This document shows positions 3,440 to 63,859 of a stretch of DNA of 64,000 bases, piece by piece. How positions within the stretch are numbered: position 1 is the first letter of the stretch; each line of letters begins with the position of its first letter. The DNA is taken from assembly GCF_022045235.1 (NCBI RefSeq), contig NW_027266286.1, positions 70,866,001 through 70,930,000 of the forward strand, given 5' to 3'. The translations under genes were made by a program, and so were the position numbers. This DNA comes from Haliotis cracherodii. Its lineage: Eukaryota. The notes beneath the pieces were generated by a model. That model saw nothing but the letters and a program-made list of their open reading frames with translations. It was not told where the DNA came from and searched no databases.

Positions 3440-4060
3440 TTGCCTACATCCCATATAGCCTACAATATTTATAATGGTCAGTTGTACCACCCTTATCATA
3501 TCAGTAAAGAGAATGCCCTTGTCACATCCCAACATCTACCAGTTCATAAAAGAAATCAAGAAGATTAAGACAGCAGATAAACGTTATAGACGGCAGACAG
3601 GTCTTGGTGGTGCTGTTAAACGACGTGCACGTATTGACAGAGACAGAGATGCCCGACTTGAGAGACTGAAGCTACACCTCGCAACTGGACGAAAAACTGT
3701 GATGCAGTTTCTAGATGCAGTTGGACACTTGGTGAAATTACAGTAATTGTTATGTGACTGATGAATTAGTGTATCACACATGTACTTGATTAACTTATGC
3801 GACTGATGATGATGATGATGATGATGATGTATGTCGAATATATGACCTTATTAAAGTATAAATCATCAGTGCAAGAGTTTATTTTCTTCAGTTGTTGAAA
3901 TATATGAAGTATACCTCATTAGTGGAAGAGTTCACTTTTCTAAAGGTATAACAGCATTTATGTGATGTGCAGTCAATACTAAATTTTTTTGATAAGGGGG
4001 TAGGCGAAATCGGGTGTAGGCGAAATCGGGTGTAGGCGATAAGAGGTCAGGCCGGAATTT
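3440..4060 (+). mobile_element. MULE-like transposon 3' end fragment
   Basis: ORF 3474-3746 contains HPNIYQFIKEIK, resembling MULE transposase C-termini; short subterminal tandem GTAGGCGAAATCGGGT at ~3999-4040. Confidence 0.5.
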
Positions 4061-4619
4061 CCTCAAGTTGAAAACTTTATTTTGAACTTTATTGTCTGTA
4101 TTAAACAAGACATATAAGCTTGAACCACCAAATGGACAAAATACCCTAATTCCTATCAATATTACGTCTTCACCTAGACATATGGAATAGAATGTGGATC
4201 AAATTTCCCCTTAACGCCACAGAATACTCAAACAAATTTAACAATGTTTCAGTCAAAGTTTTATTATATAAGGTCATTATACATTACATAAGATGAAATG
4301 TAACTGGGAATTGTAGAGCGCAAAACTATAAGTTAGTAACTCCTATGTATATATGACTATAACTATTGCTCCTAAATTAGCACTAAAACAAAAGTGCCAA
4401 TTGTACGAATTTTTTAACATTTAAAAAAAATCAGTTGCAGGTATGAAAATAATTCGGCACATGTAACTCCTGTGTGTATGCTTTCTACAGGCTTATGGCA
4501 CGGCATTGGCATCAAATAAAGAGGGCAATCTCAATCTGTGCCGCGGCATTAACTCATTCATAATTTAACATAATTTGTTAACAAAATCATATGTCCCAAT
4601 GCCATCAACGTCGTCTTTG

Positions 4620-8700: not shown

Positions 8701-8855
8701 NNNNNNNNNNNNNNNNNNNNNNNNNNNNNNNNNNNNNNNNNNNNNNNNNNNNNNNNNNNNNNNNNNNNNNNNNNNNNNNNNNNNNNNNNNNNNNNNNNNN
8801 NNNNNNNNNNNNNNNNNNNNNNNNNNNNNNNNNNNNNNNNNNNNNNNNNNNNNNN
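8701..8855. other. Assembly gap (155 N)
   Basis: Run of N. Confidence 1.
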
Positions 8856-9926: not shown

Positions 9927-12900
9927 CTATTGCATCCCAAGTAGATCGTCCCTTTCTCGATAAAGACACTGAAGTTGCTTCTGGAGGACTTTTTTGATTG
10001 CCTGTAAAATTAGTAATAAAATATATTACATCAAGATAATTACCCAGTTTTAAATGTTCCACAAATGAAGAGAACATTTCTATATGAAGAGCAAAAGAAA
10101 CGCAAGTCTGACACTTTTTTCAAGTTTTTGAGTGAGTGAGTGAGTATGGTTTTACGCCGCTTTTAGCAATATTCCAGCAATATCACGGCGGGGGACACCA
10201 GAAATGGGCTTCACACATTGTACCCATGTCGGGTATTGATCCCGGGTCTTCGGCTTGATGAGCGAACGCTTTAACCGCTAGGCTACCCGACCGCCCCATT
10301 TAATTCACAATAGCTCTAAAGTAAACGGTTTTAAAGGAAAGGCTTTTAAGTTAGTATGTAGACGTTAGTTCTTATATCATTGTGTCAATGTTAAAGAAAG
10401 GAGACTTTGATAAATGTGCTTTAGATTCGGCTGTAAAAGAGTGAGTAGCTACACATATTTACTAGATTCAAGTGTGATAATCACCCCTTTGTTTCTTCTT
10501 GCACCCTGCTTCGTCAACTTATCAAGTTTTGCCTCTTTCTCTGTTATACTCATCATGATGATTTCAAGGCTCTTTGGAACCAGTGGAGGAACACGTGTGG
10601 TTGGACCCCAATCTCTGCTTCCACTGGCTGAAGGCTGAGTATTTGGACATTCCTTGATTTCCTCATCAGTAACATCATATGCCTTTGGACCAGACCAGCC
10701 AAACCCCAAGACAAAGTATACATTCTTTTGCCATAACGACCGTTTTCGAATAGGTAGTGATGTGGGGATCGCTACAATGAACATATTCCCTCCTACCGAT
10801 TTCAATTGCATGTTGATTTCCAGTCCCTCATTTAGGAGAACACCTTTCATTCGCTTCAGTCTATGCAAAGCTGTTGCTGTGCGCCAGACTCCATCTCCTA
10901 TGTCTCCTTTTCCTTCATTTCTGCCATTTAGTTGCTCATAGTAAACTATACTCTCCATGTCTTGGCCTTTTCCAAGGAAGAAATAGGTTGCATCTTTTTT
11001 CCTGAAATGGCGGTTTCCATCTTTTTGTCTTGGGTGATTCTTGTAAAATGCTTCTTTCCATTGGCTGATTGCCTCCAAAAGTCTTGAAGATGAGCACAGG
11101 TTATACATGTGACGATCCTCCGTTGGCAAATGAAAAAGAACAAGATACAGAAAAGTCTCAAGGTGAGGCCGTGTTCCCTGTTGAATTTTACATTCATAAA
11201 GACTTTTGCTCCATTCTATCATCTGTTGGAAGCTTGCAAGTGTTTGTTCCTTATCTGCCACCCCATTGTATGCAATACATGTGTTCAAAATGGTCACAAA
11301 ATCAAAAGCATTAGCTTGAGGTGATTTCACATTTTCAACCATTAACTTGAAAGCGCTGCAAAGCTTCATTCCACCTGTTGCCATGATCCGGAGAGCACTG
11401 GGTAGTGATGCAACCCCTAGCCTACTGGCGCGCCTTCTGCGAAATGCCATGGCATCTTCATTATTCATGCTATGGGGAACTCTATCAGTTCCTTCTCCAA
11501 AGAAACCATCAATATTTTCTTTGAAGCTGATAAGGAGCTCATTGTTTAGGTGTGAATCCTTTGGCATAATGTCGGCAGATGTCACACTTTTAAGCTGGTG
11601 AAATTCCTCATCAAGTCTTCGAAGAGCTTTTGTTGCATCATCTTGCATCTGTTTCAAATGCTCAATATCTGCTTCACCAACAAACTGAAACGTGTCGGGA
11701 ACAAACTTTGCATTGACCAAGAATTTATGCATATCCTCCTTCCCTGTGTAACACTGAAACTTAGGGAAAGTACTCAGCAACAGTATGATGACCCTGATCT
11801 CTCCACAGTATCCTGCATTGTTGATAGCAGTAGTTTCATTTTCACTGAGCTGTTGCTCTTTTCTGAATGTCTCTATAGCTTTGAAGGCAATGCCAATTAT
11901 ACGTTTAGCATCATCCCCATTGATTTTGTTGGTATCTGTTTCTGAGTGTTGAACATATTCATCAAACAGCTGCTCCTTGTAAACCATTGCTAAAGTATCC
12001 CAGAGGTAGGAATTTCGGTACCACTTGTTTGTAGCAATCTTAGCAAAGCGTTCAGCTTCTGTCCAGTTTTTGCAATGGATGTAAAATCTAGCAATCTGTT
12101 GAGCAATGATTGCATCATCAGACATCTCAAATACCTTGATCATGAGGTTTACAGTTCCATCAATATCAACATCGTCAATGGCTGCCAAAACAAATGGTGA
12201 AAACCTTTCTTTTCTATCATCTTTTGAGCGACATCTTTTCTTGATGATGTTTCTGATAATGTACAGTAAACGTTCAGTATATGCAGAATCAACGAGAAAC
12301 ACATTAGAATCGAGTAGCTGGTTCATTATGTCAACAATAGTTTCTCCTAGCTTTTCCATAAGTTTCAAAAGAATTGCTTTAGCAAGGAGGCTATGTATGA
12401 TGCGCAATGTCTGTTCTTTTGTCCCTTGACCAGCTGATCGTGATGATTTATTTAGGAGCACCCTCAATGGTGAACTTAAGCATGTCTCCCAACCTTTTTT
12501 CCTTGAATAGGTGCGTTGATTTCCTGTACTGATGATCATGCCGCACCTCTGTGGTGTTTGCATGAGTGGATCAAAGCAGGCCACGGGAACCGGAATGAAG
12601 TCAACATCATATGCATTTATGAGAGCAAGGTATTTTAGGACCCTTTGCTCTTTTTCATCTTTGATGTTATTGACGAGTGTACCAACTGTTCTGTGAATAT
12701 ATTCACTGTTGAAGTTTTCCTTCAGGATGTTAAAGGATATCAAGAGTTTGGGATCGACTTTTTTGTCATCTTTGAACCTCTTTTCTAGATCAGCATTTTT
12801 CATTTCAAACCAGGCAAGCTCCTTTGTGGTCAGTTCATGCTTGAGTAGTACTTTCCGGCTGTCACACTGGATTGGCAAATCAGCTCTTCGCTGGCAAACA

Positions 12901-15900
12901 AGAAGGACACAGAAAACAGATAGAATGCCATCCGATGATCTTGCTGCGATACGAGCTTTATCCTCCAGGACAGCATAGAGAAGGCATAATTTTTCATCAT
13001 CATGGTTGTCAATCAAAACCAGTGGGGGATTGGGACTATCAAGATCCTCATAGCATCTCAGAGTAGCTATTTGTTCAGGTGTCTGGTCATTTATTTGCTT
13101 AACTTCACAGCATCTGTACTTGTCCTTCAGATCCCACAGTATCTGGCGAGCTGATGTGGTACCTCCTGCCCCTGGTTGGTGTAACAGTGTCACCACTGTT
13201 ACTTTATTGTCAGTTTCTTTAGTAGTAGTAAGGGCGTCTGTTATTTGATTCATCAGACTTTCATGACAAGCTCTTTTAAGAACGTGATCTCCAGGAAACC
13301 AAAAATTCCACCAGTCTACTTCACCTCCCCTGAAGAAAATCTCCTCTACCTCACGTCTTTTAGCTTCTTTCTTCTTGGTATCATTCACAATTTCACTGTC
13401 GCTACACTGTTGTATGCTGAGAATGTCCAAATCGCACATATCCTCCTTCACTCTTTGCCGCAGAGAGCAATGCATACCCTTTGATGTTGGTAAAAGGCAT
13501 GCAGATGGTTGTCTCAAATTTGTGACTTGACAAATGGCATCGTTAAGATGATTCCAAGGAATGCCAACAACACATCTCTCATTGAGTGATCCTGTATCAG
13601 CACAGTGACGTGCAATCATCTGTTCTTTCCAAAGATCAGCAATAGCGTCATTTTCAGCCAGTATTATCCACTGTTCTTGGAATTTAGTAAATATCTCATC
13701 TGCTGCCTCCAACATAACTTCATAATTCGATGAGAAAAGAAATACTAACACCAGTGCTCTTCCTTGGGGTATGCTATTATGATAAAATTGTATGGCCCCC
13801 CGAAATCCTTCAATGCGCTTTTGTTTCCACTCAAAGGGGCCAAAGGCATGCTTTCCCAGACATTCATAGCCATTACAAAATGTCCATGTGTTCAAGGAAG
13901 ATGTTTGAAGATTCTCTAAAAATGCAGCATGCTTTTCTTTCTCAAGATTTTCTCCTCCGTTCTTATCAAAGTTGTCTGTTGTTAAGACCTGCATGACTCT
14001 CTCTTTGTTCATCACATAATGATAAAGGCCTTTAGTGTCACTTTCGGGATCAAAGTCAAAGATTGCTGTTGCATCTATATCTTTAACAAATGATAGATTT
14101 TCTTCTATGAAATTTGCTTCCATTTTGTCACCAAGAGGACTAAAAAACAACACAGGATAAACGTCATCTTCAAGTGTTTCTGCGCCACCAGTAAACAAAT
14201 TGAGAAATTTTCTTCTCAGGTTTTGGGCAGGTCCAGGCGCCTGTGTCTTCGCTTCTTGGGTTTGACGTAAAGTTGTTAAATCCATTACAGTTTTAGATGT
14301 GAAGTGTACAAGATCTCTTCCATCATGCCTTTTTATTGTGCCATCTGTATATCGAAACAGTCTCTGTTTATTCTTCTTGCCAATGGGGAATTTTGAACTG
14401 ATTAGAAACACTTCATGTTTTACAACATGACTTGTTGGAACAACATCTATTTCTACAACATAGCTGTGGTCGTCACTGTTATTCCTGTCAATGACCTCTA
14501 CAAATGTTGGATCTCGTATTACTTTAGACACAATCTCATGATGCTTTTCTTCGAAGGCAAATTTTATTTTGCTCATGATTTCACTCCGACATTTTTCTCT
14601 GTCAAGAGTGTATCCAGCAACTTCTCCCGGCAGTACTTCAAGAGAGCCCTCTGGGCATATACCAAAGTAAATTGTGCCATTTATCCTGTCATTCATACAT
14701 GCTGCAGCAAATGCAACTGTCTCATCTGCCATTTGCTGAATCATGACTGTAGGCTTTTGAATGTTAGCAAAATATTTGACCGGCTGCACCATGTTACCAC
14801 TGCAGAATTCAGTGTTCACAACTCTTCCTTTCACATATTTGACCCATGGTTCTACTGGATGGTCAAACTTCCTTAATGTCTCTTGGTATGGGCATTCTCT
14901 CGGCTTGCAAGTGCTATCTGGTGACTCAATGACACTTTGTTCAGTGTTCGCGTTTTCCGTATCATGAGGTTGCGATTTAATGTTTGAAATGAGTAATGAC
15001 AAGGCCCGCTTATGTCCAAATTTCAAGGAAGGGAAAAGTTCATTTATGTCTGTCTCCTTTAGTGAGAGGAACACTTCTCCGGTGATGCACTCGTCTTTGC
15101 ATTTTGCTATGACGTCTTCCTTCTTGCCAACTGTAGGATGATTGTTGAGGAAATCACATAGACCATCAACTTGCATCAGTTTGACATTTTCTTTGGTCGG
15201 TGTTGATAAGAGGCGAGGTTCTAAAATATCGAAGATTTGTTCGTAAGAATGCTTTCAATACAGTTAATTATTTATTATTAATGGCGAAAGAGGGATTTAT
15301 GATTACAAACACACATGCACATAATCACACACAGAGTAGACTCTCATCAGGTGGCAATTAGATGGACGGAGCCATCTTATAACTTACTTCTAGTTTACAC
15401 AGTTTACTTGTTAATGTGTTTCTTTCACTGTAAGAAATGACAATTCAAGACGTCAAATATCAATCAGTGACATTAGGGTACATGTATTGTCTCTCACGTG
15501 TTTTGAAGTTTTTATTTGAATATTTACGTACTTGTAGGTGTCTGTGAAGGTCTTATTTGTAAATTTCTCAAATAGGGTCTTGGTAGGGTCAAGGAAAGAT
15601 AACGAAAGACATAATGAAAAAACATAATGTAGAGCTGAGATGAACATCTATTTCTGATCTATTTGGAAAATTAACAAAATATTTTTGAAACAGCTTGTAA
15701 ATTACATGACTTTACAATTCAAAGGATACATTTCCCTTTTTGAACGCTGTTGCCAAGTTGTGTCAGTGAACACTTGTGTGATGAGATCTCTGAGCTGTTT
15801 GTCACCCCAGTCATAGTTCACCCCTGCCGACGTCACACATTCCTTGATGACCGCTTTAACATCCGGCAGGGGACACGTCGAGCCTTTTCTGTTGATAAAT

Positions 15901-18900
15901 CTATCAAGCAGGGCACCTCTGACGACATCTTCTGTTTGTGGTTGATCAGCTATGACGAAGAAATAAAAGATTGTGGCAAGTTAAATAACAATAGAATTGC
16001 TCCCTGTTTTAACAGCTCATTGTTGTATATGGCTTACGTGATAGTGAGTGAGTTAATTTGGTTTACCGCCGCTTTGAACATTATTTCGGTTAATATATGC
16101 ACACCTACAAGGGTATGGTGCTAACAAACCTAGAATCACAATCAAGGAGAACCGGGATTCGAACCAACGGGCATAGGTTTCTAGCACGCCTAAGGGACGT
16201 CATTCTGCACAATATGTAACAATCGGCGACAGACTGACATTTCTGGTTTGCACACTGACAGAGGATACGGAGAACCTTCTCGGTTGATGACTCTATCAAC
16301 CAGAGTTTCTCTGACGACATATTATGCTTGTGGTTGATCACCTATGACCACGTAATAGTTGTAAACGTCAAAGACCTACTTTATTTCTTGCTGTCCTCAT
16401 CAAGCTGACATGTTTCAGAAATGGTGTTTGATTGTAACATTTTTTTCCAACAGAATGTTCCTTTATGTTAATGGGACCATTTTGAATTTGTATGTATTCT
16501 ACGTGAAGTGTGAATTTACATGAAAATGTCACGAGGAAGGAATTCTTTGCAATATCCAGGTGCAAGTTAGGGGAATCGTGAGCAGCGATACTGTCCATTT
16601 TAAAACCGCATTACATTCAAACGTTTATTAACCAATATTTGTTCCTTGGATCAAAAACGTCATGCCACGACTCGCAACGTTGCCATTGGAGGCCTGGAGG
16701 CTGGGGAGTCTGAATCTGCTGTTGCACTTCATCTCCATGTTCACCAAGCACCATTTCTCGTGTTTGGGATTGATATCAGCAACACATTTCCACGCAAGAT
16801 CGGCCCCGCAAACCCACGGCCATTCTGGAAACCAGATCCTGACCCATAGAACATTTGTTGGTCATCGATAGACAGGTACGCCTACGACAACCGCCTCCCT
16901 GGATGCTTCAGCAACTGCTACACATATTGCTGGACAATTTGGCTATGTCTCCACAAGCTTGGAAGAAACGATTTCTTCAATGCAGAGCAGTTTTGGAGGC
17001 ACATGTTGGTTGAAATATACTGAACCAAATTAAAAACTTCACAATCCTAACATTTTAACATTTTGACCAGTTATCATTGTGGGCCCTTATTGTGTATTAA
17101 AACAGTAATGGCCACGTATTGTCTTCAGATAACACCTGTTTTTGTGCAGGTGAATCGATCAAAATCATGTGCACAGCACTATAGTGGCAAAAGTGTTTTT
17201 TCACGTGCAACTGGTCACGTGGCCATAATACCGCACGTGTTTTCAGCCATACTTGTTAGCAGTCATTAACAAAAAAAGAAAAACACAAGAAAACAAAAGT
17301 CTTTACGGCCATTTGTTATGCCACGCCTTTCAAATGTGCAACGTGAACGTGCCATCGGCATGTTGCAGACGGGAATGTCCGTAGCTGAAGTCGCAAAGAC
17401 GATGGGTTGTATTCGACCGACTGTTTATGATAAACAGACGCATCTACAGCAAACGGGTACCACCGCTGATCGCCCTCGGCCAGGTCGACCACGTGTGACG
17501 TCACATGCAGAGGATCGTCAGATTGTCTTACGTCACCTCCGTAACCGATTTTTGACGGCTACATCAACCAGATTTGCTGATGGTAGGGCGAGGGTGTGGA
17601 GGCGCCGTCATGAACGTTACTCCCAGTGTTGTGTACAGGAAGTTGATAGATTTCGAGGCAGAAGTGTCATGGTGTGGGGTCCTTTCTGTGGCAATGCACA
17701 TTCCAGGCTTCTTGTCATCCGTGGCAACCTCAACGCTGCTGCTTACCGTGACCAGGTACTGGCAACAGAACTTCTGCCTTTTATGGCAGCACATGGACCC
17801 GGTTTGATCTTCCAACACGACAATGCCAGACCCCACACAGCAATTTTGACAAGGAATTTCCTTCCGAATGCGGGAGTCAACGTCATGGACTGACCGTCAA
17901 GGTCTCCCGACCTCAATCCCATCGAACACGTCTGGGATGCTCTTGGCAGAAGTCTGCGCACTCTCCAGAACCAACCACAGAATTTGCAAGATCTTGGCAC
18001 CATTTTGCAGCAACAATGGCGTCGTCTTCCCAATCATGTGTTCACAAGCATGACAAGGGCTATGCGGAGGCGTTGTGTGGCAGTTGTCAACGCACATGGT
18101 GGCCATACACGCCACTGAACTTGTGTGCCATCAGATTCTGGTGCTTGGGATTTATAATGTTGATGTTATTACCGAATACAGTGGGTGCTTGGAACAAATT
18201 ATGGTTACCATCGTTAATTAAAATCCTTCTTTGGACATTAATGATTAAAAATTACCTTCTCTGATTCATTTGTCCGTTTTATATCATATATGGGATTACT
18301 TTTAAAAATGTGAAGTTTTTAATTTGACTCAGTATAGTTACTGAGAACACACGCCCACTTGTCAAATGACATCAATACTGACTAAATTTGTATTCCGACT
18401 TTCTTGTTGTATATGTACTATGGCTGCAAATGATATTGTATTAAAGTGGTTTCAGGTGAACAATGTAATTACCATTGCATGTCTCTTTTACGGGTGCCAC
18501 CGGTGGGGCAGAGATGTCCTATGAATATGGAAAGGGTTTTGTCGCTTTTATTTACCTTGAACACAACATCTAAAAATATGGGAAAATTCACCTATGGGTT
18601 TCTATTGTGGGAGAGCATATAACCGGGAGTATAACTAAACTCATTCTTTTAATTTGATTAAAATCACAACCCATTTTACAAGTTCAAACCTGTGCAAGTA
18701 ACAATACAGCAATGTGCTGTCATATACCGCTTCAACTGACCAATGAACATTGAGAATCGATAAATTAACACATGCCANNNNNNNNNNNNNNNNNNNNNNN
18801 NNNNNNNNNNNNNNNNNNNNNNNNNNNNNNNNNNNNNNNNNNNNNNNNNNNNNNNNNNNNNNNNNNNNNNNNNNNNNNNNNNNNNNNNNNNNNNNNNNNN

Positions 18901-20031
18901 NNNNNNNNCTATTTGTGACACTTGTGTTAGATATGACCTATACTTGGTTATTGTAGGGACGTTGCCCTATAATCTGCCAGCTGCCGTAAGTTAATATGTC
19001 ACGCTCGTGTGTGTACATGTTTCAAGCTATCCTTTGTAGCATTTGGCTACGCACTGCTCTCTTAACACTAGAAAACAGTTGCACGCATACATACAATAGT
19101 GATCACGCGCACCATGACAACACAACACAACCCGTTCAAACATGAGCAGGTAACACAACACCATGTGCTGCCGAATTTCTTCCGTTAAGGGCGTATGTAA
19201 TTACTCATATAGTTTCCTTTTCGTACTTATGCACTGTCATTTCGAGTGCCTCGGGTTCGCCGTTGTTATAGTTGAGACGGGTGCCTTAAGTTTGTCTGCT
19301 GGTATGAAATATGGGACTTTAACAGCCCAGTATCGTCGGCCCTAAAGACGTATTGCATTAAATGTCAACCTATCGTCGAGCCTAAACGGTTCTGCAGAAT
19401 GTCGTCCCTGAGGCGTGTCAGAAACCTATGATCGTTGTTTCGAATCCCTGTTCGCTCTGTTCATTACACCTCCGCGGCTAGGTCATAGAGCGTCTGCCCA
19501 GAGAGCGGAAGGTCGGGGGTTGTCTACCTGCCTAAGGCTCGCTCGGCATTCATTGGATAAAACATGGACTAGTACACACACGACTTTCCACATTGAGCTC
19601 AAATGTGGTATAACTGAAAATACTGAATTAATGTATAAAGCGACGTTACATCAAACCCAGTCATTCACTTTAAAGATGCTCATGTGTTTATCACCTAGCT
19701 GAAGTTTATCTCCAAAGGACTTACCTTCTAAACAGGCATCTTCATCGGGAGTAGCTGCAAGTTTCTCCTCTATGTGCGGCTGGATTTCTCTTACAATGTC
19801 ACAGAAACGTTTATACGCGTTCAGATTTTGTGGTTTTCGTTTCAGCGTGAACAGTAGTCTTTCAACCTTTTCAGGTTCAGGAGAAATACTTTTGATTAGT
19901 TTATACTCGCTGTCGTTCAGTGTGCCATTTTGGAACAGGCCGTTAAGGATGTCACCGCCATCTTCCAACTGAAGCTCACTTTTAAGATAGACCCAATTCT
20001 TCATTATCCTGCGCCATTCCTTGGAATCCAT
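9927..20031 (-). CDS. SAMD9: CARD- and winged-helix-fused SAMD9/SAMD9L-like STAND NTPase (spliced model, ~1794 aa)
   Basis: Predicted coding exons (minus): 20031-19725 (CARD, donor G|GTAAGT, phase 1), 15949-15730 (acceptor TCATAG, donor AT|GTATCCTTT, phase 2), 15578-15532 (donor A|GTACGT, phase 1), 15220-10485 (acceptor TTTTAG), 10001-9927 (acceptor TTACAG; tentative). All junctions keep frame with no stops; total 5385 nt. Confidence 0.75.
10130..10297 (-). mobile_element. SINE family 1 (in the putative last intron of the SAMD9-like gene)
   Basis: Full-length reverse copy. Confidence 0.9.
10449..15220 (-). CDS. SAMD9: Main exon of SAMD9-like protein: SAM, AlbA_2/Schlafen-like, Sir2-like, STAND P-loop NTPase, TPR/helical, OB-fold
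   Basis: 1575-aa ORF. SAM-like N-terminus (ITGEVFLSLKETDINELFPSLKFGHKR), FAAACMNDRINGTIYFGI (SAMD9 AlbA_2 signature), IFDFDPES, FFRGGEVDWWNF, Walker A HQPGAGGTT, Walker B PPLVLIDN, C-terminal VYFVLGFGWSGPKAYDV. One giant coding exon is typical of the family. Confidence 0.93.
15532..15949 (-). CDS. Two small exons (15949-15730, 15578-15532) encoding a putative RFX-like winged-helix domain
   Basis: Spliced translation ADQPQTEDVVRGALLDRFINRKGSTCPLPDVKAVIKECVTSAGVNYDWGDKQLRDLITQVFTDTTWQQRSKREIPYLRNLQIRPSQTPT; open frame, phases compatible with the flanking exons. Not in the ORF track. Domain identity is by eye. Confidence 0.7.
15579..15729 (-). other. U12-type (minor spliceosome) GT-AG intron, 151 nt
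   Basis: 5' site GTATCCTTT at 15729-15721; branch site TTTCCTTGAC at 15597-15588 with the branch A 10 nt from the 3' AG (15580-15579); no polypyrimidine tract. Confidence 0.85.
16225..16345 (-). pseudogene. Degenerate duplicate (pseudo-exon) of the 5' part of exon 15949-15730
   Basis: TCATAG|GTGATCAACCACAAGCATAATATGTCGTCAGAGAAACTCTGGTTGATAGA aligns with TCATAG|CTGATCAACCACAAACAGAAGATGTCGTCAGAGGTGCCCTGCTTGATAGA; the GAA codon has become TAA. Confidence 0.75.
16600..17015 (+). mobile_element. Older, highly degenerate Tc1-like remnant
   Basis: ATGCCACGACTC...GCCATTGGAGGCCTGGAGGCTGGGG (MPRL..AIG.LEAG) and a decayed PD..PIEH motif (CCAGATCCTGACCCATAGAACAT). Confidence 0.55.
17018..18334 (+). mobile_element. 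Tc1/mariner (DD34E Tc1-type) transposon, defective
   Basis: 26-bp TIRs TACTGAACCAAATTAAAAACTTCACA / TGTGAAGTTTTTAATTTGACTCAGTA with TA flanks. Transposase 17318-18118: HTH N-terminus, GRPR, FQHDNARPH, (W>stop)PSRSPDLNPIEHVW, GGHTRH; an internal deletion removes the first catalytic Asp region. Confidence 0.92.
18778..18908. other. Assembly gap (131 N) inside the CARD-to-winged-helix intron
   Basis: Run of N. Confidence 1.
19725..20031 (-). CDS. CARD (death-fold) exon, first coding exon of the SAMD9-like gene
   Basis: MDSKEWRRIMKNWVYLKSELQLEDGGDILNGLFQNGTLNDSEYKLIKSISPEPEKVERLLFTLKRKPQNLNAYKRFCDIVREIQPHIEEKL fits the CARD six-helix pattern. Acceptor TTTCAG 4 nt before the ATG; strong donor GTAAGT at 19724. 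Confidence 0.8.
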
Positions 20032-20710
20032 ATTCCTGAAATATGACCTCGATCAGTTATTCATGTAAACTAATGACATGGTAGGGTGGACGATCCAGTT
20101 CTTGATTACTATTGTAGCAATGTTTCCGTTTACTTTATAACATCGTTATGAAGCAACTGAAAATTTGAGGTTAGTGTCCAAAAGAAGTTCAAATTATCTA
20201 ATGTTATGTGGTAGTATACATTGTAATTCAGTTATAATGATTGTTACTGTTGTGGCTAGGTTTTGTTGTCCACGGCTCGTAATTTAGAGTTACCTTCTAA
20301 ATGCCATCCAATGATCTTGTTAATCATTCTGTTTAAACTTTCAGGATCGAGACATCGTGTGATTCCAGATACAGATATAAAACATATGTAACCGATATTT
20401 CTTAAATTATATATTTTCACCGTTCTCGCCCATGAGGTTTTCAAAGCATATAGCGACGACTCGATTTACATTTTACATCATACCACAAAACAAACTGGAA
20501 TTCACAAACGGAATAGTCTCTTATCAAAATGTACTATCACCTTTTGAATTCGGCCTATCGTCTGCTTAAGGTCTAATTTGCATGATTTGCATCAAACATG
20601 AATTAAAACGATCTTTTCCGCATTTGCCTATTTTAATTATTTTTTTTAGCAAATGTAGTTGCGTGTTTATCACATCGATATATCTCGATAGTTCCTTATA
20701 GTCTTAACAT

Positions 20711-32551: not shown

Positions 32552-35231
32552 ATGGGAAAGGTATATATCTATATCTTATTTATTTCTTATAAATGGCTTT
32601 TACCTTGAAATATATTTTAGACTGAACTCATTGAGAGAATTTATCTATGTGTAGAGTTCATATATCTAAGTGAAATGAATATGGTTATCTTCACTAAATT
32701 AATAATGCGTGATACCTTTACGTTAAAAGTAGCATTTTATCATTAAGAGTGAGTGAGTATGGTTTTATGCCGCTTTTAGCAATATTCCAGCATTATCACG
32801 GCGGTTATCATTTAGAAACGGCTGGCGATATTGTCATCAACACATTTTTATTTATAACAACTATTCAAAAAATAGTAATACTCAATGTTTAAAGGGTATG
32901 GTTCAAATTGGCCGTTTATTCTAGAACCTTTTGGACAAAAGGGACATCACAGCAATAAAATATCCCTTTTACTATGACATAAGTATAAGGGTGTGCTGTA
33001 CACTATACATAACATGGCCAGTTATAAGATGTAGTCTTTTGTCTTTCAGTGTATATACAGCATCGCAGCGATAGTTTGCCTCGTCGCCATGACGACGGCC
33101 CTTCCCCCTCTCCCAACTCCCGCCTGTTATTCCAAGCAACTTTCGTCTGACCAAAGCTTTGACCTCAGCTTTGTCTGCAATGACGGAAGACAATACCCTG
33201 AGTAAGTACATTTAGCAACGTAGCAAACAATTGACAGGACAGGTCGGTTTTATTTCGTTAGAAACGTCCTTTTTCGCTAGCGAAAATACCATTTGAATTT
33301 CCATATATATTAAATCAAATGAAAACGAGTCATATTTATACATAAGGCGTAAGTGCCAATAAGTCAAAATGTCGATATATATTCATTTTGTATGACATAA
33401 CATGTACGTTTGAGTCGAATTTATATGTTATAAGAGTTAATGTACCGTTAAGTCGAAGTGTCTGACATTTTCACTTTGGACTATATAACATGTACCTCTA
33501 AGTGGCATAACCGACGTGCGCTGATGAACCGTTAAGTCGAAATGTCTGACATATTCACTTTGGACTATATAACATGTACCTCTAAGTGGCATTACCGACA
33601 TGTGTTGATGTACGGTTAAGTCGAACTGTCTGACATTTTACTTTGTCTCCAGACAGGAGATCGAGGAGGCTCTGTACTACGCCGACGACCACTGGCGTAT
33701 CTACCTCAACCTGACATCCACCTGCTTCCAGGACCAGGACACCTACTTCTTGAACAAACAGTAAGTGACAAATCCGGAATAACGAATCTGGAATAGGGAG
33801 TAATGTCCCTATAGTTCATTTGATCGTCCACGATAAGCACGTCTTGAAAACTGGTTCACCATCCACTATCAATGACTTTCATTCGGGATGATTCATGAGA
33901 AACATACTGATAAAATGTAGAAAAAGAACATTAAAATATTGTGGTCTAATGTTCATTGCTCTATACACTGAAAAGCTCCATGTTAACCAAATAACGTTAC
34001 TGTTAAATGTTGTACGTTGTGTATTTAGTTCAATGCTTGTTTTCCTGGTATCCATACGAATTATCATGCCAGATATTCACTTCCCCTTTTAGCCATTCCC
34101 GTAGTTCTTTCCATAAGTATATTTGAGACCATGACATGTACAAATGAATTGCTGATGTTGGCCAATGTTACATTATTTAACATATATTGGCAAAAAGTAC
34201 ATTATTCAACATATACTGGCGAATGTTACATTATTCAACATATATTTGCGAATGTTACATTATTCAACATATATTGGCGAATGTTACATTATTCAACATA
34301 TATTTGCGAATGTTATATTATTCAACATATATTGGCGAATGTTACATTATTTACATATATTCTGGAAACGTTATTTATTTGACCTTGACCTTGCAGCTCT
34401 GAGCCCAACTACTACAAGTTGAAGAGCGTGTGCAACACCACTCGTACCATGGTGCACACCATCTATGCCAGGGACGGTCAAGTCTGCCACGTTGTCCGCC
34501 CTATGTCCCAGAAAGTCTTCTACGCCACATGCGGGTAGGTACACAGCTATGTTATTTTTAGAAAGTTCCTGTATGTTTCTACAACTCATAAAGATGTAAT
34601 AATGAAGACTAAAATTCTAAAACATGCAGACGCCAACAAAATCAAACAAATAATTCTTGGAGTAGTTTGAAATTGTTTTATAAATTTTTGTATTCAAAGG
34701 AAGCTTAAGCGAATCAAAACCCCTTGCGTATATTGTCCACATTCATATATACACACTTATTGTATAAAAATAAAGGTATAAAGGATAAAACCTTTTTGCG
34801 AAATAAAGGATTATCAACAGGGCAATAATGATAACAATCTACATATCGATACTTAATGACTTAAATATTACTTATTTACGTTATTAAATATGTATTGTTT
34901 GTTTTACAGAGGAGAATGTAACCTTGGTTACGACGGCGTGACCGGCTACCACTGCATTCAACGCGGCATCACCTACCGCAACTTCCTCGGTTACTGCCGT
35001 TTCCCCGACCCCGCAACCTTCCCAGAATCTTCCCCCATCTACGCTCTTGACCCCTCCGTCGACAACTTCTATGACCCCCGTGTTGCCCCACCAACCCACC
35101 GCATGCAGCACAACCTCCTCAAGAGCGGGGGCCACTACAAACCCAAGGGCTACTTCACGGAGTTGAGCGTTACCCTCCCCAGCTACTGCGGCTGCAGGGG
35201 ATATTTCTGCCCCCACGACAGGATTGTTTAG
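32552..35231 (+). CDS. Secreted Spaetzle/NGF-like cystine-knot protein, type A, copy A1 (242 aa)
   Basis: Exons 32552-32560, 33050-33201, 33653-33760, 34397-34534, 34910-35231, all GT-AG and in frame. Signal peptide MGKCIYSIAAIVCLVAMTTA; C..YP..I pro-region; SVC..QKVFYATC..GEC..HCIQ..LPSYCGC knot pattern; TATA at 32474; AATAAA near 35674. Confidence 0.85.
34160..34365. repeat. 29-bp intronic minisatellite (A1 intron 3); longer array at 45950-46270 in A2
   Basis: Unit AATGTTACATTATTCAACATATATTGGCG; ~7 copies in A1, ~11 in A2, one degenerate unit in A3. Confidence 0.9.
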
Positions 35232-44487: not shown

Positions 44488-47135
44488 ATGGGAAAGGTAT
44501 ATATCTATATCTGATTTATTTCTTAGAAATGGTTTATATGTTGAAATATATTTAAAAATGAATTGATTGAAAGCATTTAGCTGTGTATAAAGTTGTATAC
44601 TGCTTATTGAAATGAATATGGTTAGCCTTTATCTTCTTTTTTTTTACGAAAATGGTGTCCACAATACATTTTTGTATTTTTAATGTGTGAACTTCGACCG
44701 TTACGTTAATGGTAGAATTTTCCGTTTTGTGGTGCTATTGTGACAAACACATATTTAGGTAATCTTCAGAGCTAATGTTCCGTAGGTAGTAATACTCAAT
44801 ATTTAAGATTTTTGTTCAACTGTTCCGTTTATTCTAGAACCTTATGGATCATAAAAACACCAGAGAAATTGAATTGTTCTTTCATTACCCCTTTATACTC
44901 AAACATAACCAATTACAAGATGTGATCTTTGTTTTCCAGTTCATCTACTATATCGCGGCGTTAGTCGGCCTCGTCGCCATGACGACGGCCCTCCCCCATC
45001 TCCCCACTCCCGCCTGCTATTCCCAGCAACTTCTGTCGGACCAGAGCTTTGACCTCAGCTTTGTCTGCAACGACGGAAGACAATATCCCGAGTAAGTACA
45101 TTGAGCTACTTCGGAAACAATGTACAGGGCAGGTTGTTTGTGTTTCGTTTGAAAAGTCTTCTTAAGTTTGCCGTTTGCTGTATGAAGTTTCACAAATATA
45201 TAAAATCAAAGTAAAATGAGTCATAAATGAATTGTATTTAAGTCGAACTGTCTTTGAATGACACACCATGTACCTTTAAGTCGAATTAATGACATGCGTT
45301 GATGTTATAAGAGTTTTTGCAGCGTTAAGTCGAAATGTCTGACATATTCACTTTGGACTATATAACATGCACCTCTAAGTGGCATAACCGACATGCGTTG
45401 GTGTACCGTTAAGTCGAACTATCTGACATTTTACTTTGTCACCAGACAGGAGATCGAGGAGGCTCTGTACTACGCCGACGACCACTGGCGTATCTACCTC
45501 AACCTGACATCCACCTGCTTCCAGGACCAGGACACCTACTTCTTGAACAAACAGTAAGTGACAAATCCGGAATAACGAATCTGGAATAGGGAGTAATGTC
45601 CCTATAGTTCATTTAATCGTCCACGATAAGCACGTCTTGAAAACTGGTTCACCATCCACTATCAATGACTTTCATTCGGAATGATTCATGAGAAACATAC
45701 TGATAAAATGTAGAAAAAGAACATTAAAATATTGTGGTCTAATGTTCATTGCTCTATACAGTGAAAAGCTCCATGTTAACCAAATAACGTTACTGTTAAA
45801 TGTTGTACGTTGTGTATTTAGTTCAATGCTTGTTTTCCTGGTATCCATACGAATTATCATGCCAGATATTCACTTTTAGCCATTCCCGTAGTTCTTTCCA
45901 TAAGTATATTTGAGACCATGACATGTACAAATGAATTGCTGATGTTGGCCAATGTTACATTATTTAACATATATTGGCAAAAAGTACATTATTCAACATA
46001 TACTGGCGAATGTTACATTATTCAACATATATTGGCGAACGTTACATTATTCAACATATATTGGCAAACGTTACATTATTTAACATATATTGGCAAAAAG
46101 TACATTATTCAACATATATTGGAGAATGTTACATTATTCAACATATATTTGCGAACGTTACATTATTCAACATATATTGGCAAACGTTACATTATTCAAC
46201 ATATATTTGCGAATGTTATATTATTCAACATATATTGGCGAATGTTACATTATTTACATATATTCTGGAAACGTTATTTATTTGACCTTGACCTTGCAGC
46301 TCTGAGCCCAACTACTACAAGTTGAAGAGCGTGTGCAACACCACTCGTACCATGGTGCACACCATCTATGCCAGGGACGGTCAAGTCTGCCACGTTGTCC
46401 GCCCTATGTCCCAGAAAGTCTTCTACGCCACATGCGGGTAGGTACACAGCTATGTTATTTTTAGAAAGTTCCTATATGTTTCTACAACTCATAAAGATGT
46501 AATAATGAAGACTAAAATTCTAAAACATGCAGACGCCAACAAAATCAAACAAATAATTCTTGGAGTAGTTTGAAATTGTTTTATAAATTTTAGTATTCAA
46601 AGGAAGCTTAAGCGAATCAAAACCCCTTGCGTATATTGTCCACATTCATATATACACACTTATTGTATAAAAATAAAGGTATAAAGGATAAAAACCTTTT
46701 TGCGAAATAAAGGATTATCAACAGGGCAATAATGATAACAATCTACATATCGATACTTAATGACTTAAATATTACTTATTTACGTTATTAAATATGTATT
46801 GTTTGTTTTACAGAGGAGAATGTAACCTTGGTTACGACGGCGTGACCGGCTACCACTGCATTCAACGCGGCATCACCTACCGCAACTTCCTCGGTTACTG
46901 CCGTTTCCCCGACCCCGCAACCTTCCCAGAATCTTCCCCCATCTACGCTCTTGACCCCTCCATCGACAACTTCTATGACCCCCGTGTTGCCCCACCAACC
47001 CACCGCATGCAGCACAACCCCCTCCAGAGCGGGGGCCACTACAAACCCAAGGGCTACTTCACGGAGTTGAGCGTTACCCTCCCCAGCTACTGCGGCTGCA
47101 GGGGATATTTCTGCCCCCACGACAGGATTGTTTAG
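44488..47135 (+). CDS. Secreted cystine-knot protein, type A, copy A2 (242 aa; mosaic of A3 and A1)
   Basis: Exons 44488-44496, 44940-45091, 45446-45553, 46300-46437, 46814-47135; intact frame; TATA at 44410. Confidence 0.85.
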
Positions 47136-60722: not shown

Positions 60723-62067
60723 TTATATATATATATATATAATTCATATATAACTGAAATATAAATTATATATAACTGAAATACACCAATAGTCCTAAAT
60801 AGGTCCATTATATTGGTGCTGTCAAAATGACATTTTTCTTCTTTTCGTTATGACATAATCTGCACGAGAGCCATCGAAGTTGTGGTCGACAGTGTGACAA
60901 GTCCTTCACGTCGCATGCAGCTGAGCGAGAGTCTGCAAGTTCATGACTAGACCAAAACCATCCCCTTCCAAAAATTGTATCCATCAGATTCACAATTAAC
61001 TGTTTGATTGATTCTAGAAGTTGGCAAATAAATAAGAAAACCATACAACTTTATGGATAACAACTTTTGGTTTATTGCATATAGCGACGTTTCGATGTAG
61101 ATTCTTACACCGTTACCAAGCTGGAGTGACAACAACCAAGCGATGAAATTCACAATTGTGTGCATGAGGTTAACGTTGTTTCTGTAATGTAACAACGAAT
61201 TCGAATCACCTTAATATTGGAGGAAATCCCGAAAGTAGCTGAGTGATAACTGTGTACAGACAAGAGCACACATGAATTCATAAGCTGCTAACACTCTTCA
61301 CCGTGTAAGCTGTTTTTAATTTGGTGCTCCTGTGTGACTGATTAGGTTGTCAGTACCTAATGCTTGCAGTGCCTGCAGAGTAAAACAGGAAGTGAGAGGT
61401 CAGGACTGGTGACTTGGCTCAACGCTCCCGACAGTGTGGATCGTTGGTCATGCTTTCAATCACTGGTTGGCCAAGTCCAGTCTCGATTATAAACAGGCCG
61501 CACTGTATAGCTGAAATAATGCTGACTGATTCACGCACTCACATAATAAAACGAAGTAAGTGTATCTGAAAAGTAAGGCGAAGCTGACATGTTCACTGTA
61601 CGTAAAACAAGTATGGTTCTTAATATCTTTCTGCGAATTTGAAAAACTAAAGAATTGATAAGATGATATGGATCCCTTTAACACGTTCCTTCATGTCGTG
61701 AGTGAGCTGGGTTTAGATACAAACTTTTTCCATTGCACGATTCCAACTATATCATAAGCATGTGTTTATGAATCACAATCAAACAATGATGAACCCTAAA
61801 TTTACAGCAAAAACTTACTTCTTAAAAGTGATATTTTTAATGAAGAGTTCTGTGTTTGCTATATGTAAAGAATACACGGGACGCTATACATTCGAATAAA
61901 TTGCTTGTTTTGCGAGATACATTTTATCACGATTTTGACAGATACAGTACGCGATTTCCATTGAGGCTTATTTAAGCGATGTGTTACTCTAGGTCTTCCA
62001 GCCCTAAAGTGTCACCCACGGATTGTCGTTAAGTGAAACCCACGGCCAAAGGTATGATGTTGGCTAT

Positions 62068-63114
62068 CCAGTCTTAGATTCGAACCAACGACAACCGGTA
62101 ACTGAGCAAAAAATTGGCCAGTCTTAGATTCGAACCCATGACGACCGGTAACTGAGCAACAAAGTAGCCAGTCTTAGATTCGAACCCACGACGACCGGTA
62201 ACTGAGCAACAAAGTAGCCAGTCTTAGATTCGAACCCACGACGACCGGTAACTGAGCAACAAAGTAGCCAGTCTTAGATTCGAATCCACGACAACCGGTA
62301 ACTGAGCAACAAAGTGGCCAGTTTTAGATTCGAACCCACGACGACCGGTAACTGAGCAACACAGTAGCCAGTTTTAGATTCGAACCCATGACGACCGGTA
62401 ACTGAGCAACAAAGTAGCCAGTTTTAGATTCGAACCCACGACGACCGGTAACTGAGCAACAAAGTAGCCAGTTTTAGATTCGAACCCATGACGACCGGTA
62501 ACTGAGCAACAAAGTAGCCAGTCTTAGATTCGAACCCACGACGACCGGTAACTGAGCAACAAAGTAGCCAGTCTTAGATTCGAACCCACGACGACCGGTA
62601 ACTGAGCAACAAAGTAGCCAGTCTTAGATTCGAACCCATGACGACCGGTAACTGAGCAACAAAGTAGCCAGTCTTAGATTCGACCCCACGACGACCGATA
62701 ACTGAGCAACAAAGTAGCCAGTCTTAGATGCGAACCCACGACGACCGGTAACTGAGCAACAAAGTAGCCAGTCTTAGATGCGAACCCACGACGACCGGTA
62801 ACTGAGCAACAAAGTAGCCAGTCTTAGATGCGAACCCACGACGACCGGTAACTGAGCAACAAAGTAGCCAGTCTTAGATGCGAACCCACGACGACCGGTA
62901 ACTGAGCAACAAAGTAGCCAGTCTTAGATTCGAACCCACGACGACCGGTAACTGAGCAACAAAGTAGCCAGTCTTAGATTCGAACCCACGACGACCGGTA
63001 ACTGAGCAACAAAGTAGCCAGTCTTAGATTCGAACCCACGACGACCGGTAACTGAGCAACAAAGTAGCCAGTCTTAGATTCGACCCCACGACGACCGGTA
63101 ACTGAGCAACAAAG
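62068..63114. repeat. 50-bp tandem satellite, ~21 copies, each containing a Pol III B box
   Basis: Unit GTCTTAGATTCGAACCCACGACGACCGGTAACTGAGCAACAAAGTAGCCA; no unique spacers. Confidence 0.95.
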
Positions 63115-63859
63115 GACAAAGTAGGACGGGAGCCATATATGAATTGTGGCAATTCAAGTGATATACTACAACCGTTTCAATACTTGTTACAAGAGCTTCA
63201 GGCATAGTCTTCAAAGAGGGCAGTACAGCGGTGATAACATTGTCATATAGGTAAGTCGTGCCGAGAAGGTTCAGATAAATGCTGTAAAAATACGGCCATT
63301 TGCATTAAATATATTTTGATTGCTCATACTGTCGACGACTATCATCTCATCTTGACGGATGTCAATGCATCACCTCAAAACAGCTCATATATTGTGTAAT
63401 ATTACACCATCTAAAACGGTAGCCTACATATTAGAGACACAATAATGATCTCAAACAAACAGAAATATCTGCCTCAGGTGATTAACTCTCACATTGACTG
63501 ATGTGGATACTCTCAATAATAATAATAGCACAAAGAAAATGATAATTTCCTGACATGTTTTGACATTTTAGGCTTGTTTGATTGATCAGATGCATTATCA
63601 TTACACCGTGTTTGCTGAAATATATACATGCAGTGACTCACTTTGGATGAATCATAGTACAGAAGGGTTAGGAAGATTGAACTGTAGGAAAAACAAATGC
63701 GAAACGTGCTCGATAACAAAATCAGGGACAAAACTGTTGTGCGTAAACAATTGGAAATAATAACTGATGTATATTTATTGGAAAAATTACTCTTCATCCA
63801 GGCTGAAAATATTTTTGTGTTTGTAAGAGAGGCAATGCATTGCTTGCAGATGTTCTGAA

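What the first reader, a model, noticed from the sequence alone, without database searches (positions are those of the whole stretch)
9927..20031. CARD + winged-helix + SAMD9 fusion: an NLR-like invertebrate innate sensor with an added signalling head
Seen: four upstream/main exons with canonical sites splice in frame (phases 1, 2, 1), giving CARD - ~90-aa module - SAM - AlbA_2 - Sir2-like - STAND NTPase - TPR - OB. Established: vertebrate SAMD9/9L begin at the SAM domain and act as virus-activated translation inhibitors related to prokaryotic Avs STAND defences; CARD+STAND is the architecture of Apaf-1 and NOD/NLRC receptors. Inference: this paralog may oligomerise via STAND and recruit caspases or adaptors through CARD, a SAMD9-based apoptosome/inflammasome-like system. 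The ORF track shows the pieces as unrelated ORFs. I cannot say whether this fusion has been reported.
Basis: partly seen in the sequence, partly recalled or inferred. Interest (0 to 1): 0.88.

Follow-up and report, generated by a model that had tools for sequence, protein, structure and literature searches.

The report
Abalone SAMD9-like gene with CARD head
This is a real black-abalone immune-type gene that puts a caspase-recruitment (CARD) domain in front of a SAMD9-like defence ATPase, but the gene is already in RefSeq and this kind of fusion was described for invertebrates in 2017, so it is a sound but ordinary finding.

Summary
Five minus-strand exons (20031-19725, 15949-15730, 15578-15532, 15220-10485, 10001-9927; phases 1, 2, 1, 0) encode exactly the 1794-aa RefSeq protein XP_071113175.1 of Haliotis cracherodii. 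Exon 1 is a CARD (Pfam above threshold; confident model closest to Apaf-1 CARD). The large exon is a clear SAMD9 homologue (E 1e-85 to human SAMD9 structures).

The N gap (18778-18908) lies inside intron 1, next to a high-copy transposon. It touches no codon. Three lines support the join:
- The H. rufescens orthologue (98% identical) and the H. asinina orthologue have the same junctions.
- Two gap-free paralogues in this genome share the layout: a CARD exon, a 220-nt module exon and a U12 intron.
- Four of about six SAMD9 paralogues have an upstream CARD exon.

Mekhedov, Makarova and Koonin (2017) reported CARD, Death and Pyrin heads on invertebrate SAMD9 proteins and proposed apoptosome-like assemblies.

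"Winged helix" is only weakly supported: a three-helix model with RFX as best structural match, below the tool's trust line, and no sequence support. The SAM-like block is supported only by profile comparison. Two of the four human tRNase catalytic residues are not conserved.

Earlier notes of this scan on this window were tested; none concerned other DNA.

The parts
19725..20031 (-). Exon 1: start codon plus CARD domain (102 codons + 1 nt, phase 1), donor GTAAGT
   Evidence: Sequence read. Pfam CARD 30.7 bits against cut-off 23.9. AF2 pLDDT 88.1, six helices with a kinked helix 1. Best Foldseek match is Apaf-1 CARD, TM 0.76/0.85, rmsd 1.9 A.
15950..19724 (-). Intron 1 (GT-AG). It holds the assembly gap 18778-18908 and a high-copy transposon remnant at about 17200-18336.
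   Evidence: Gap located. Antisense ORF 17318-17893 has HTH_29/HTH_23 hits, the transposase-type helix-turn-helix. At least 40 genomic copies at about 95% identity. The flank 18909-19700 is unique apart from a roughly 65-nt short repeat.
15730..15949 (-). Exon 2 (220 nt): conserved three-helix module found only in mollusc SAMD9-like proteins
   Evidence: AF2 gives helices 2-16, 27-41 and 49-59, pLDDT 68.7. Exon length of 220 nt is conserved in two paralogues. A profile search of 1.84 billion representative proteins found only SAMD9-like proteins plus short fragments.
15579..15729 (-). Intron 2: U12-type (GT-AG class) minor intron
   Evidence: The donor GTATCCTTT is the only such 9-mer in the window. 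The branch motif TCCTTGAC lies 9 nt before the AG. The same donor and branch motif occur in paralogue L014, and the same donor in L003.
15532..15578 (-). Exon 3 (47 nt): basic linker with the conserved P-x-F/L-x-N-L motif; donor GTACGT
   Evidence: alignment of N-termini.
10485..15220 (-). Exon 4 (4736 nt): SAM-like block (about 14982-15176), AlbA_2/tRNase-like (about 14250-14822), Sir2-like, NOD with P-loop HQPGAGGTT (13155-13181) and Walker B LVLIDN (about 13005-13022), TPR, and OB (to about 10671)
   Evidence: Translation. phmmer to human SAMD9 PDB chains gives E 1.1e-85 over residues 133-1132 and 1387-1516. SAM-like block: hhalign 95.8%, E 7e-9. Motif coordinates.
9927..10001 (-). Exon 5: last 24 codons plus TAG; acceptor TTTTACAG

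Best explanation
Shown: this is a genuine five-exon gene of the black abalone (RefSeq XP_071113175.1, 'SAMD9-like'). It belongs to a mollusc-wide subfamily of SAMD9-type STAND proteins. Their N-terminus carries a CARD, a lineage-specific three-helix module and a divergent SAM-like domain, ahead of the conserved AlbA_2, Sir2-like, NOD, TPR and OB body.

Inferred: like human SAMD9, the protein probably sits in the cytosol in a closed, nucleotide-bound, autoinhibited state and opens and oligomerises when it senses infection or stress. Oligomerisation would cluster the CARDs and SAM-like domains. The CARDs could then recruit a CARD-bearing partner, either a caspase or an adaptor, by homotypic binding and so add a cell-death or signalling output.

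Whether the AlbA_2 domain still cuts tRNA, as in human SAMD9, is doubtful, because two of the four human catalytic acidic residues are replaced.
For: Gene model:
- The exons, phases and splice sites are correct and translate to exactly P0001.
- The H. rufescens orthologue XP_048258377.1 is 98% identical over 1794 aa without gaps and has the same junction residues.
- The H. asinina orthologue is 79% identical and carries a CARD.
- Gap-free paralogue L014 (= XP_071087481.1) has the same layout. Its exon 1 is 304 nt and its exon 2 is 220 nt. Its phases are 1, 2, 1 and intron 2 is a U12 intron. A third paralogue behaves likewise.
- CARD exons lie upstream of four of about six SAMD9 paralogues.
- CARD-bearing SAMD9 homologues occur in gastropods and bivalves: Haliotis, Babylonia, Pomacea, Bradybaena, Tegillarca and Potamilus.

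Domains:
- CARD.
- SAMD9 body.
- SAM-like block, and HHpred 98.6% for an oyster homologue in PMC5445408 Table S1.

Mechanism by analogy:
- Human SAMD9 is an ATP-bound autoinhibited STAND protein that is activated through intermolecular contacts (PMC13600222).
- DEATH-fold heads on invertebrate SAMD9 were already read as apoptosome-like (PMC5445408).

Nuclease:
- The human tRNase residues are E184, E196, E218 and D241 (PMC13245274).
- The abalone protein has E (placement ambiguous by one residue), Y, E and P.
Against: The exon 1 to exon 2 splice across the gap-bearing intron therefore rests on gene prediction and comparative evidence.

No CARD partner was identified. The one CARD-plus-caspase-like gene I inspected (L024) lacks the catalytic His and Cys motifs.

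The nuclease inference comes from alignment only, and loop lengths differ around D241, so a shifted acidic residue (E in 'CPEG') could substitute. Human SAMD9 acts without adaptors, so the CARD might serve only self-association or regulation.
Confidence: 0.6

Rival explanations
1. The CARD is a regulatory or self-association head only. The protein works like vertebrate SAMD9, as a self-contained effector that arrests translation through its AlbA_2 nuclease. The CARD, together with the SAM-like domain, merely promotes or restrains homo-oligomerisation and recruits no caspase or adaptor.
For: Human SAMD9/9L need no adaptor, and their effector is the N-terminal tRNase (PMC13245274; PMC13600222). 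The AlbA_2 core motifs (FAAACMNDR-NGT-YFG and VVEIDVVP) are strongly conserved in all mollusc homologues. E218 and probably E184 are kept in this protein. Mekhedov et al. regard SAM and DEATH-fold heads as functionally interchangeable.
Against: The E196 equivalent is never acidic in the mollusc sequences. The D241 equivalent is Pro, Gly or Ser in most of them. The H. asinina orthologue even has Val at E218. This argues against the human catalytic mechanism. A CARD conserved from bivalves to gastropods alongside a SAM-like domain suggests it adds something the SAM-like domain does not.
Confidence: 0.25
2. Artefact: the CARD exon belongs to another transcription unit or was brought next to the SAMD9 gene by a scaffolding mis-join at the N gap. 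In that case the true protein starts inside exon 4 or at exon 2.
For: A gap of estimated length lies between the CARD exon and the rest. It is next to a high-copy transposon, a typical place for assembly errors. No RNA evidence was obtainable. An in-frame ATG at 15176 would give a SAM-first protein like the vertebrate one.
Against: Two other abalone species' assemblies give orthologues with the same CARD joined at the same residues. Gap-free paralogues have the CARD exon 1.7 kb upstream of an equally long 220-nt exon 2, with identical phases. The exon 1 donor (GAAG|GTAAGT) and its phase 1 fit the phase of exon 2 exactly. The same architecture occurs in six mollusc genera.
Confidence: 0.05
3. 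The head is a nucleic-acid sensor. The exon 2/3 module is an RFX-like winged helix that binds viral or misplaced DNA or RNA and triggers the STAND switch, and the CARD is the only output. This would be a SAMD9-based apoptosome that has given up the nuclease.
For: The best structural matches of the module model are RFX5 (Z 7.0) and RFX1 DBD (Z 6.4), and most other top rows are winged helices. The global hhalign alignment to abalone RFX is colinear. The module is followed by a conserved basic stretch. The human nuclease tetrad is not conserved.
Against: The Z values are below the tool's own trust line for small helical domains, and the model has pLDDT 68.7. Foldseek gives no significant hit. There is no Pfam RFX signal at these exons. 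hhalign probability is 0.1-2.7%. Many winged helices, such as cullin WHB and PCI domains, bind protein rather than nucleic acid.
Confidence: 0.1

Closest known systems
Invertebrate DEATH-fold SAMD9 proteins described by Mekhedov, Makarova and Koonin 2017 (for example Lingula anatina XP_013415988.1, CARD + AlbA_2 + SIR2 + Apaf-1-like NTPase + TPR + CSD)
   Same: An N-terminal CARD in front of the full SAMD9 core, in a lophotrochozoan. The same functional reading was given: a STAND hub forming apoptosome- or inflammasome-like particles.
   Different: The abalone and other mollusc proteins carry both a CARD and a SAM-like domain, whereas the paper's text says DEATH-fold heads occur 'instead' of SAM. 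They also carry a conserved roughly 75-aa module between the two that the paper does not describe. The paper's Table S1 does list a SAM hit in an oyster homologue, at residues about 197-239.
Human SAMD9 / SAMD9L
   Same: The domain order from AlbA_2 to OB is the same, with E 1e-85. The P-loop lacks the lysine and has an upstream His (HQPGAGGTT versus human HHPGCGGTT). A SAM-type block precedes AlbA_2.
   Different: Human proteins start at the SAM domain and have no CARD or module. Of the human tRNase residues E184, E196, E218 and D241, only about two are conserved here. The second Walker B residue is Asn rather than Asp.
Apaf-1 / CED-4 apoptosome and CARD-bearing NLRs (NOD1/2, NLRC4)
   Same: N-terminal CARD, central STAND NOD and C-terminal repeat sensor. 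The CARD model superposes best on Apaf-1 CARD.
   Different: The NOD is of the SAMD9 type, not NB-ARC or NACHT, and Pfam gives only weak nSTAND hits. [quoted passage not shown] The repeats are TPR plus an OB fold, not WD40 or LRR.
Prokaryotic Avs (antiviral STAND) proteins
   Same: A STAND NTPase with an N-terminal effector and a C-terminal TPR-type sensor. Reviews draw this as the nearest functional parallel of SAMD9.
   Different: Avs proteins use intrinsic nuclease or other enzymatic effectors and have no death-fold adaptor domains. Homology to Avs was not tested here.

Membership tests
SAMD9/SAMD9L family | Significant colinear similarity over AlbA_2, Sir2-like, NOD, TPR and OB | tested here: met
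   phmmer against PDB: human SAMD9 9zjr_A E 1.1e-85, residues 133-1132 and 1387-1516 of the exon 4 product. Vertebrate SAMD9L hits at E 1e-72 to 1e-81.
SAMD9/SAMD9L family | Atypical P-loop without the canonical lysine, with a conserved upstream histidine (PMC5445408) | tested here: met
   HQPGAGGTT at 13155-13181 aligns with human HHPGCGGTT. The feature is described in the paper.
SAMD9/SAMD9L family | tRNase-SA catalytic residues E184, E196, E218, D241 (human numbering) | tested here: not met
   Alignments: E184 aligns with E (placement ambiguous by one residue), E196 with Y, E218 with E, and D241 with P in a longer loop. E196 is non-acidic in all mollusc homologues. Residue list taken from PMC13245274.
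SAMD9/SAMD9L family | N-terminal SAM domain | tested here: inconclusive
   Pfam SAM models are silent on the 80-aa piece and on three homologues. A 17-sequence mollusc profile matches the N-termini of homologues of which six of nine carry Pfam SAM, at hhalign 95.8%, E 7e-9. HHpred 98.6% for an oyster homologue in PMC5445408 Table S1.
CARD (death-fold superfamily, PF00619) | Profile score above the curated threshold | tested here: met
   30.7 bits against 23.9, E 3.1e-7, covering profile positions 1-83 of 85. Paralogues and orthologues score 30-37 bits.
CARD (death-fold superfamily, PF00619) | Six-helix bundle with a kinked first helix | tested here: met
   AF2 pLDDT 88.1, pTM 0.79, with helix 1 split at residue 12. 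The top 40 Foldseek rows are almost all CARDs. Apaf-1 CARD gives TM 0.76/0.85, rmsd 1.5-1.9 A over 93-95 residues.
CARD (death-fold superfamily, PF00619) | Homotypic binding to a partner CARD | not testable with these tools
   No partner is known. The genome holds at least 58 CARD exons. Complex prediction was not used because no specific pair is claimed.
Apaf-1 / NLR type receptors | NB-ARC or NACHT type NOD | tested here: not met
   Pfam shows only sub-threshold nSTAND_NTPase5 and nSTAND3 hits and no NACHT or NB-ARC. The NOD aligns with SAMD9.
RFX-type winged helix (PF02257) | Sequence profile match to the RFX DNA-binding domain | tested here: not met
   No Pfam hit for exon 2 or for whole homologues. 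A PF02257 scan of the genome hits true RFX genes but not the three module exons. hhalign gives 0.13% and 2.7% with a 13-sequence profile.
RFX-type winged helix (PF02257) | Winged helix-turn-helix fold | tested here: inconclusive
   The exon 2 model has three helices, pLDDT 68.7. Foldseek gives no hit at E <= 0.001. VIA-align wide gives RFX5 Z 7.0, RFX1 DBD Z 6.4 and many winged helices, but the tool says Z under 8 may be a common arrangement. The putative wing lies across the exon 2/3 junction and was not modelled.
U12-type (minor spliceosome) intron | Donor /GTATCCTT and branch site TCCTTRAC about 10-15 nt before the 3' splice site | tested here: met
   GTATCCTTT at 15729-15721 is the only copy in the window. 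TCCTTGAC followed by 9 nt and AG lies at 15595-15579. The feature is conserved in paralogues. The consensus is from general knowledge of U12 introns.

The most novel reading that the evidence does not exclude
Mollusc CARD-SAMD9 proteins may have given up the vertebrate-type tRNase output and become true adaptor-recruiting STAND receptors, that is, a SAMD9-based apoptosome. Their lineage-restricted module between the CARD and the SAM-like domain would then be a previously undescribed winged-helix-like domain that takes part in sensing or in partner choice.
Probability: 0.2. Interest if true: 0.6.

Novelty: already known. Interest (0 to 1): 0.28.

Why it matters
SAMD9/9L are important human antiviral and disease genes, and how they are activated is only now being worked out. 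Invertebrate relatives with a CARD head show that the same STAND body can be wired to death-fold signalling. This bears on how SAMD9 evolved from Avs-like ancestors, and on mollusc antiviral immunity, since abalone suffer herpesvirus epizootics.

The point was made in 2017, however, and this gene is already annotated. What this window adds is modest:
- A clean gene structure.
- Evidence that the CARD and a SAM-like domain coexist in one protein.
- A conserved module of unknown function.
- An indication that the human nuclease site is not conserved in molluscs.

Tried and rejected
A search for short Logan proteins matching the CARD exon found one 117-aa product, which reads through the donor into the intron. 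It is a genomic contig and gives no splice evidence.

Module identity. The following gave nothing usable:
- Pfam.
- PDB by single sequence.
- PDB by profile, which returned only spurious RecA-fusion linker hits.
- ESM Atlas features, score 0.77, which is noise.
- Foldseek against the PDB.
- RFX profile comparisons.

Partner search. I looked for CARD exons next to caspase exons. The clearest case (G000:C1:69.77 Mb, L024) is a CARD plus a caspase-like ORF without the catalytic His and Cys motifs. No complex prediction was sent, because I claim no specific pair.

Joined sequences. Searches were done exon by exon by reference, or with the database protein P0001. The only joined step was a script that concatenated the five exons and printed a true/false comparison with P0001.

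N gaps. The N stretches were left as they are, and nothing was looked up to fill them.

Full report
**What is in the sequence.**
The minus strand between 9927 and 20031 holds five exons.
- Exon 1 runs from the ATG at 20031 to 19725 (307 nt, donor GAAG|GTAAGT).
- Exon 2 is 15949-15730 (220 nt).
- Exon 3 is 15578-15532 (47 nt).
- Exon 4 is 15220-10485 (4736 nt).
- Exon 5 is 10001-9927 and ends in TAG.

A search with the exon 4 product returned a 100%-identical database protein, P0001, of 1794 aa. P0001 is RefSeq XP_071113175.1, 'sterile alpha motif domain-containing protein 9-like [Haliotis cracherodii]'. The window is therefore black abalone.

A script confirmed that the five exons together (5385 nt) translate to exactly P0001. 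It printed only a true/false answer. All searches used single exons by reference or the database protein.

**The assembly gap.**
The run of N at 18778-18908 lies inside intron 1 (19724-15950). It is 946 nt downstream of the exon 1 donor and 2.8 kb upstream of the exon 2 acceptor. It interrupts no codon, so the frame is carried by the splice phases and not by the gap.

On its exon 2 side lies a repeat present in at least 40 copies at about 95% identity. That repeat carries an antisense ORF with transposase-type HTH_29/HTH_23 hits. This is a plausible reason for the assembly break. The other flank is unique apart from a roughly 65-nt short repeat.

I left the N stretch untouched.

**Indirect evidence that the CARD exon belongs to this gene.**
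1. The red-abalone orthologue XP_048258377.1 (three accessions with one protein) is 1794 aa. It is 98% identical without a single gap and has the same residues at all junctions. The H. asinina orthologue, 1784 aa and 79% identical, also carries the CARD. Both come from other species' assemblies.
2. The paralogue on contig C78 at 32.03 Mb (= XP_071087481.1, locus L014) has no N and the same layout. Its exon 1 is 304 nt and its exon 2 is again 220 nt. A linker exon follows, then the large exon, with phases 1, 2, 1. A third paralogue (L003) also has a 220-nt exon 2.
3. Intron 2 is a U12-type intron in both paralogues inspected. The donor GTATCCTT is present in L014 and L003, and the branch motif TCCTTGAC lies 8-9 nt before the AG in L014. 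In the window GTATCCTTT occurs once in 64 kb on both strands, exactly at the predicted donor. One of two TCCTTGAC-N(6-14)-AG matches is exactly at the predicted acceptor.
4. Of about six large SAMD9-type exons in the genome, four have a CARD exon a few kb upstream on the same strand.
5. CARD-bearing SAMD9 homologues are predicted in Haliotis, Babylonia, Pomacea, Bradybaena, Tegillarca and Potamilus.

A mis-join or a chimeric prediction is therefore unlikely. I put it at about 5%.

**Domains.**
*CARD.* Exon 1 scores 30.7 bits against Pfam CARD (cut-off 23.9). With a 13-sequence alignment, AlphaFold2 gives pLDDT 88.1 and a six-helix bundle with the kinked first helix. The best Foldseek rows are all CARDs, led by Apaf-1 CARD (TM 0.76/0.85, rmsd 1.5-1.9 A).

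*SAMD9 body.* The exon 4 product aligns with human SAMD9 structures at E 1.1e-85, from the tRNase/AlbA_2 domain through Sir2-like, NOD and TPR1, and again over the OB end. The lysine-less P-loop with its upstream His (HQPGAGGTT) is present.

*SAM-like block.* The block at about 14982-15176 is invisible to Pfam. A profile of 17 mollusc sequences matches the N-termini of nine SAMD9 homologues, six of which carry a Pfam SAM domain, at hhalign probability 95.8%, E 7e-9. The 2017 paper's Table S1 gives HHpred 98.6% for SAM in an oyster homologue. I call it SAM-like.

*Exon 2 module.* This module is conserved in gastropods and bivalves. A three-sequence profile run against 1.84 billion representative proteins found only SAMD9-like proteins, short fragments of them, and repetitive false positives. 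It models as three helices at pLDDT 68.7. Foldseek gives nothing significant. The wide structural search puts RFX5 (Z 7.0) and RFX1 DBD (Z 6.4) at ranks 1 and 3 among many winged helices, but the tool warns that Z under 8 can be a common arrangement. The Pfam RFX model finds the true RFX genes of this genome and not the module exons. hhalign against abalone RFX domains gives 0.1-2.7%. 'Winged-helix-like, possibly RFX-like' remains a lead and is not a result. The putative wing would span the exon 2/3 junction and was not modelled.

**Nuclease site.**
The human tRNase-SA residues are E184, E196, E218 and D241 (PMC13245274). In the alignments:
- The abalone protein keeps E218 and probably E184, whose placement is ambiguous by one residue.
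- It has Tyr at the E196 position, which is non-acidic in every mollusc homologue.
- It has Pro at the D241 position, inside a longer loop.
- The H. asinina orthologue has Val at E218.

The surrounding core motifs are well conserved. The domain is therefore intact, but the human catalytic arrangement is not.

**How it probably works.**
By homology with human SAMD9, an ATP-bound closed STAND protein that is activated through intermolecular contacts (PMC13600222), I expect a cytosolic autoinhibited switch that oligomerises on activation. The added CARD would then be clustered and could nucleate homotypic CARD assemblies with a caspase or adaptor. This is inference.

The genome has at least 58 CARD exons and many caspase exons. 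I identified no partner. The one CARD-plus-caspase-like gene I inspected lacks the catalytic motifs. The main rival is that the CARD only helps self-association and the nuclease remains the effector.

**Known or new.**
[quoted passage not shown] The fusion and its reading are thus published, and the gene is a RefSeq model.

Four things go slightly beyond that paper:
- The CARD and a SAM-like domain coexist in one protein.
- There is a conserved module between them.
- Intron 2 is a conserved U12 intron.
- The human nuclease tetrad is not conserved in molluscs.

I found no paper on mollusc CARD-SAMD9 function. A SAMD9-like transcript is reported as differentially expressed in H. laevigata (PMC5405107).

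**Verdict.**
Novelty is 'already known' and interest is low to moderate.

Earlier notes of this scan on this window (the U12 intron, the RFX-like module and the degenerate AlbA_2 motif) were tested as described. No note on other DNA reported the same fusion.

Noticed in passing
window 15579-15729 (also L014:3689-4963 and L003 minus strand): Intron 2 is a textbook U12-type GT-AG intron, with donor GTATCCTTT and branch motif TCCTTGAC 9 nt before the AG. The same donor follows the 220-nt exon in both other paralogues, which are only about 44% identical in protein.
   Followed up: yes
window 17200-18336: High-copy repeat inside intron 1, with at least 40 genomic copies at about 95% identity. It carries an antisense ORF (17318-17893) with transposase-type HTH_29/HTH_23 hits and lies next to the assembly gap. 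Other copies have about 200 extra bases between the two matching pieces.
   Followed up: partly
window about 33500-59000: Tandem segmental duplication with a period of about 11.8-12.0 kb. Two to three copies are 95-100% identical (the third about 75-82%), for example 33525/45318/57134 and 43155/55171.
   Followed up: partly
window 61965-63214; 34097-34512 and 45913-46415: A minisatellite of 50-nt units (about 25 copies, 94-95% alike). A 29-nt-period minisatellite is present in two copies of the 12-kb duplication.
   Followed up: no
window 8701-8855: A second assembly gap (155 N), about 1.1 kb downstream of the gene's stop codon.
   Followed up: no
L024 (G000:C1:69768500-69774500), ORFs 1794-2480 and 3449-4222: A CARD ORF is followed 1 kb later by a caspase-like ORF (Peptidase_C14, 97 bits). 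The usual His and Cys catalytic motifs appear to be replaced (LGG and IPYGSG), which suggests a CARD-bearing pseudo-caspase.
   Followed up: no
G000 contig C67, 35.28-35.44 Mb and 39.85-40.22 Mb: Tandem arrays of near-identical CARD exons. The genome holds at least 58 CARD exons in all.
   Followed up: no
P0029 (H. rufescens paralogue XP_048249165.1), C-terminal about 450 aa: One isoform of the third CARD-SAMD9 paralogue ends in about 25 tandem copies of an 18-aa unit (GGPPR-VTRHENTASGES) that is absent from the shorter isoforms.
   Followed up: no
window 20032-20045: The start codon is preceded by TTTCAG|GAAT. This is a likely 3' splice site, so a 5'-UTR exon probably lies upstream. The red-abalone orthologue has three transcript accessions for one protein.
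   Followed up: no
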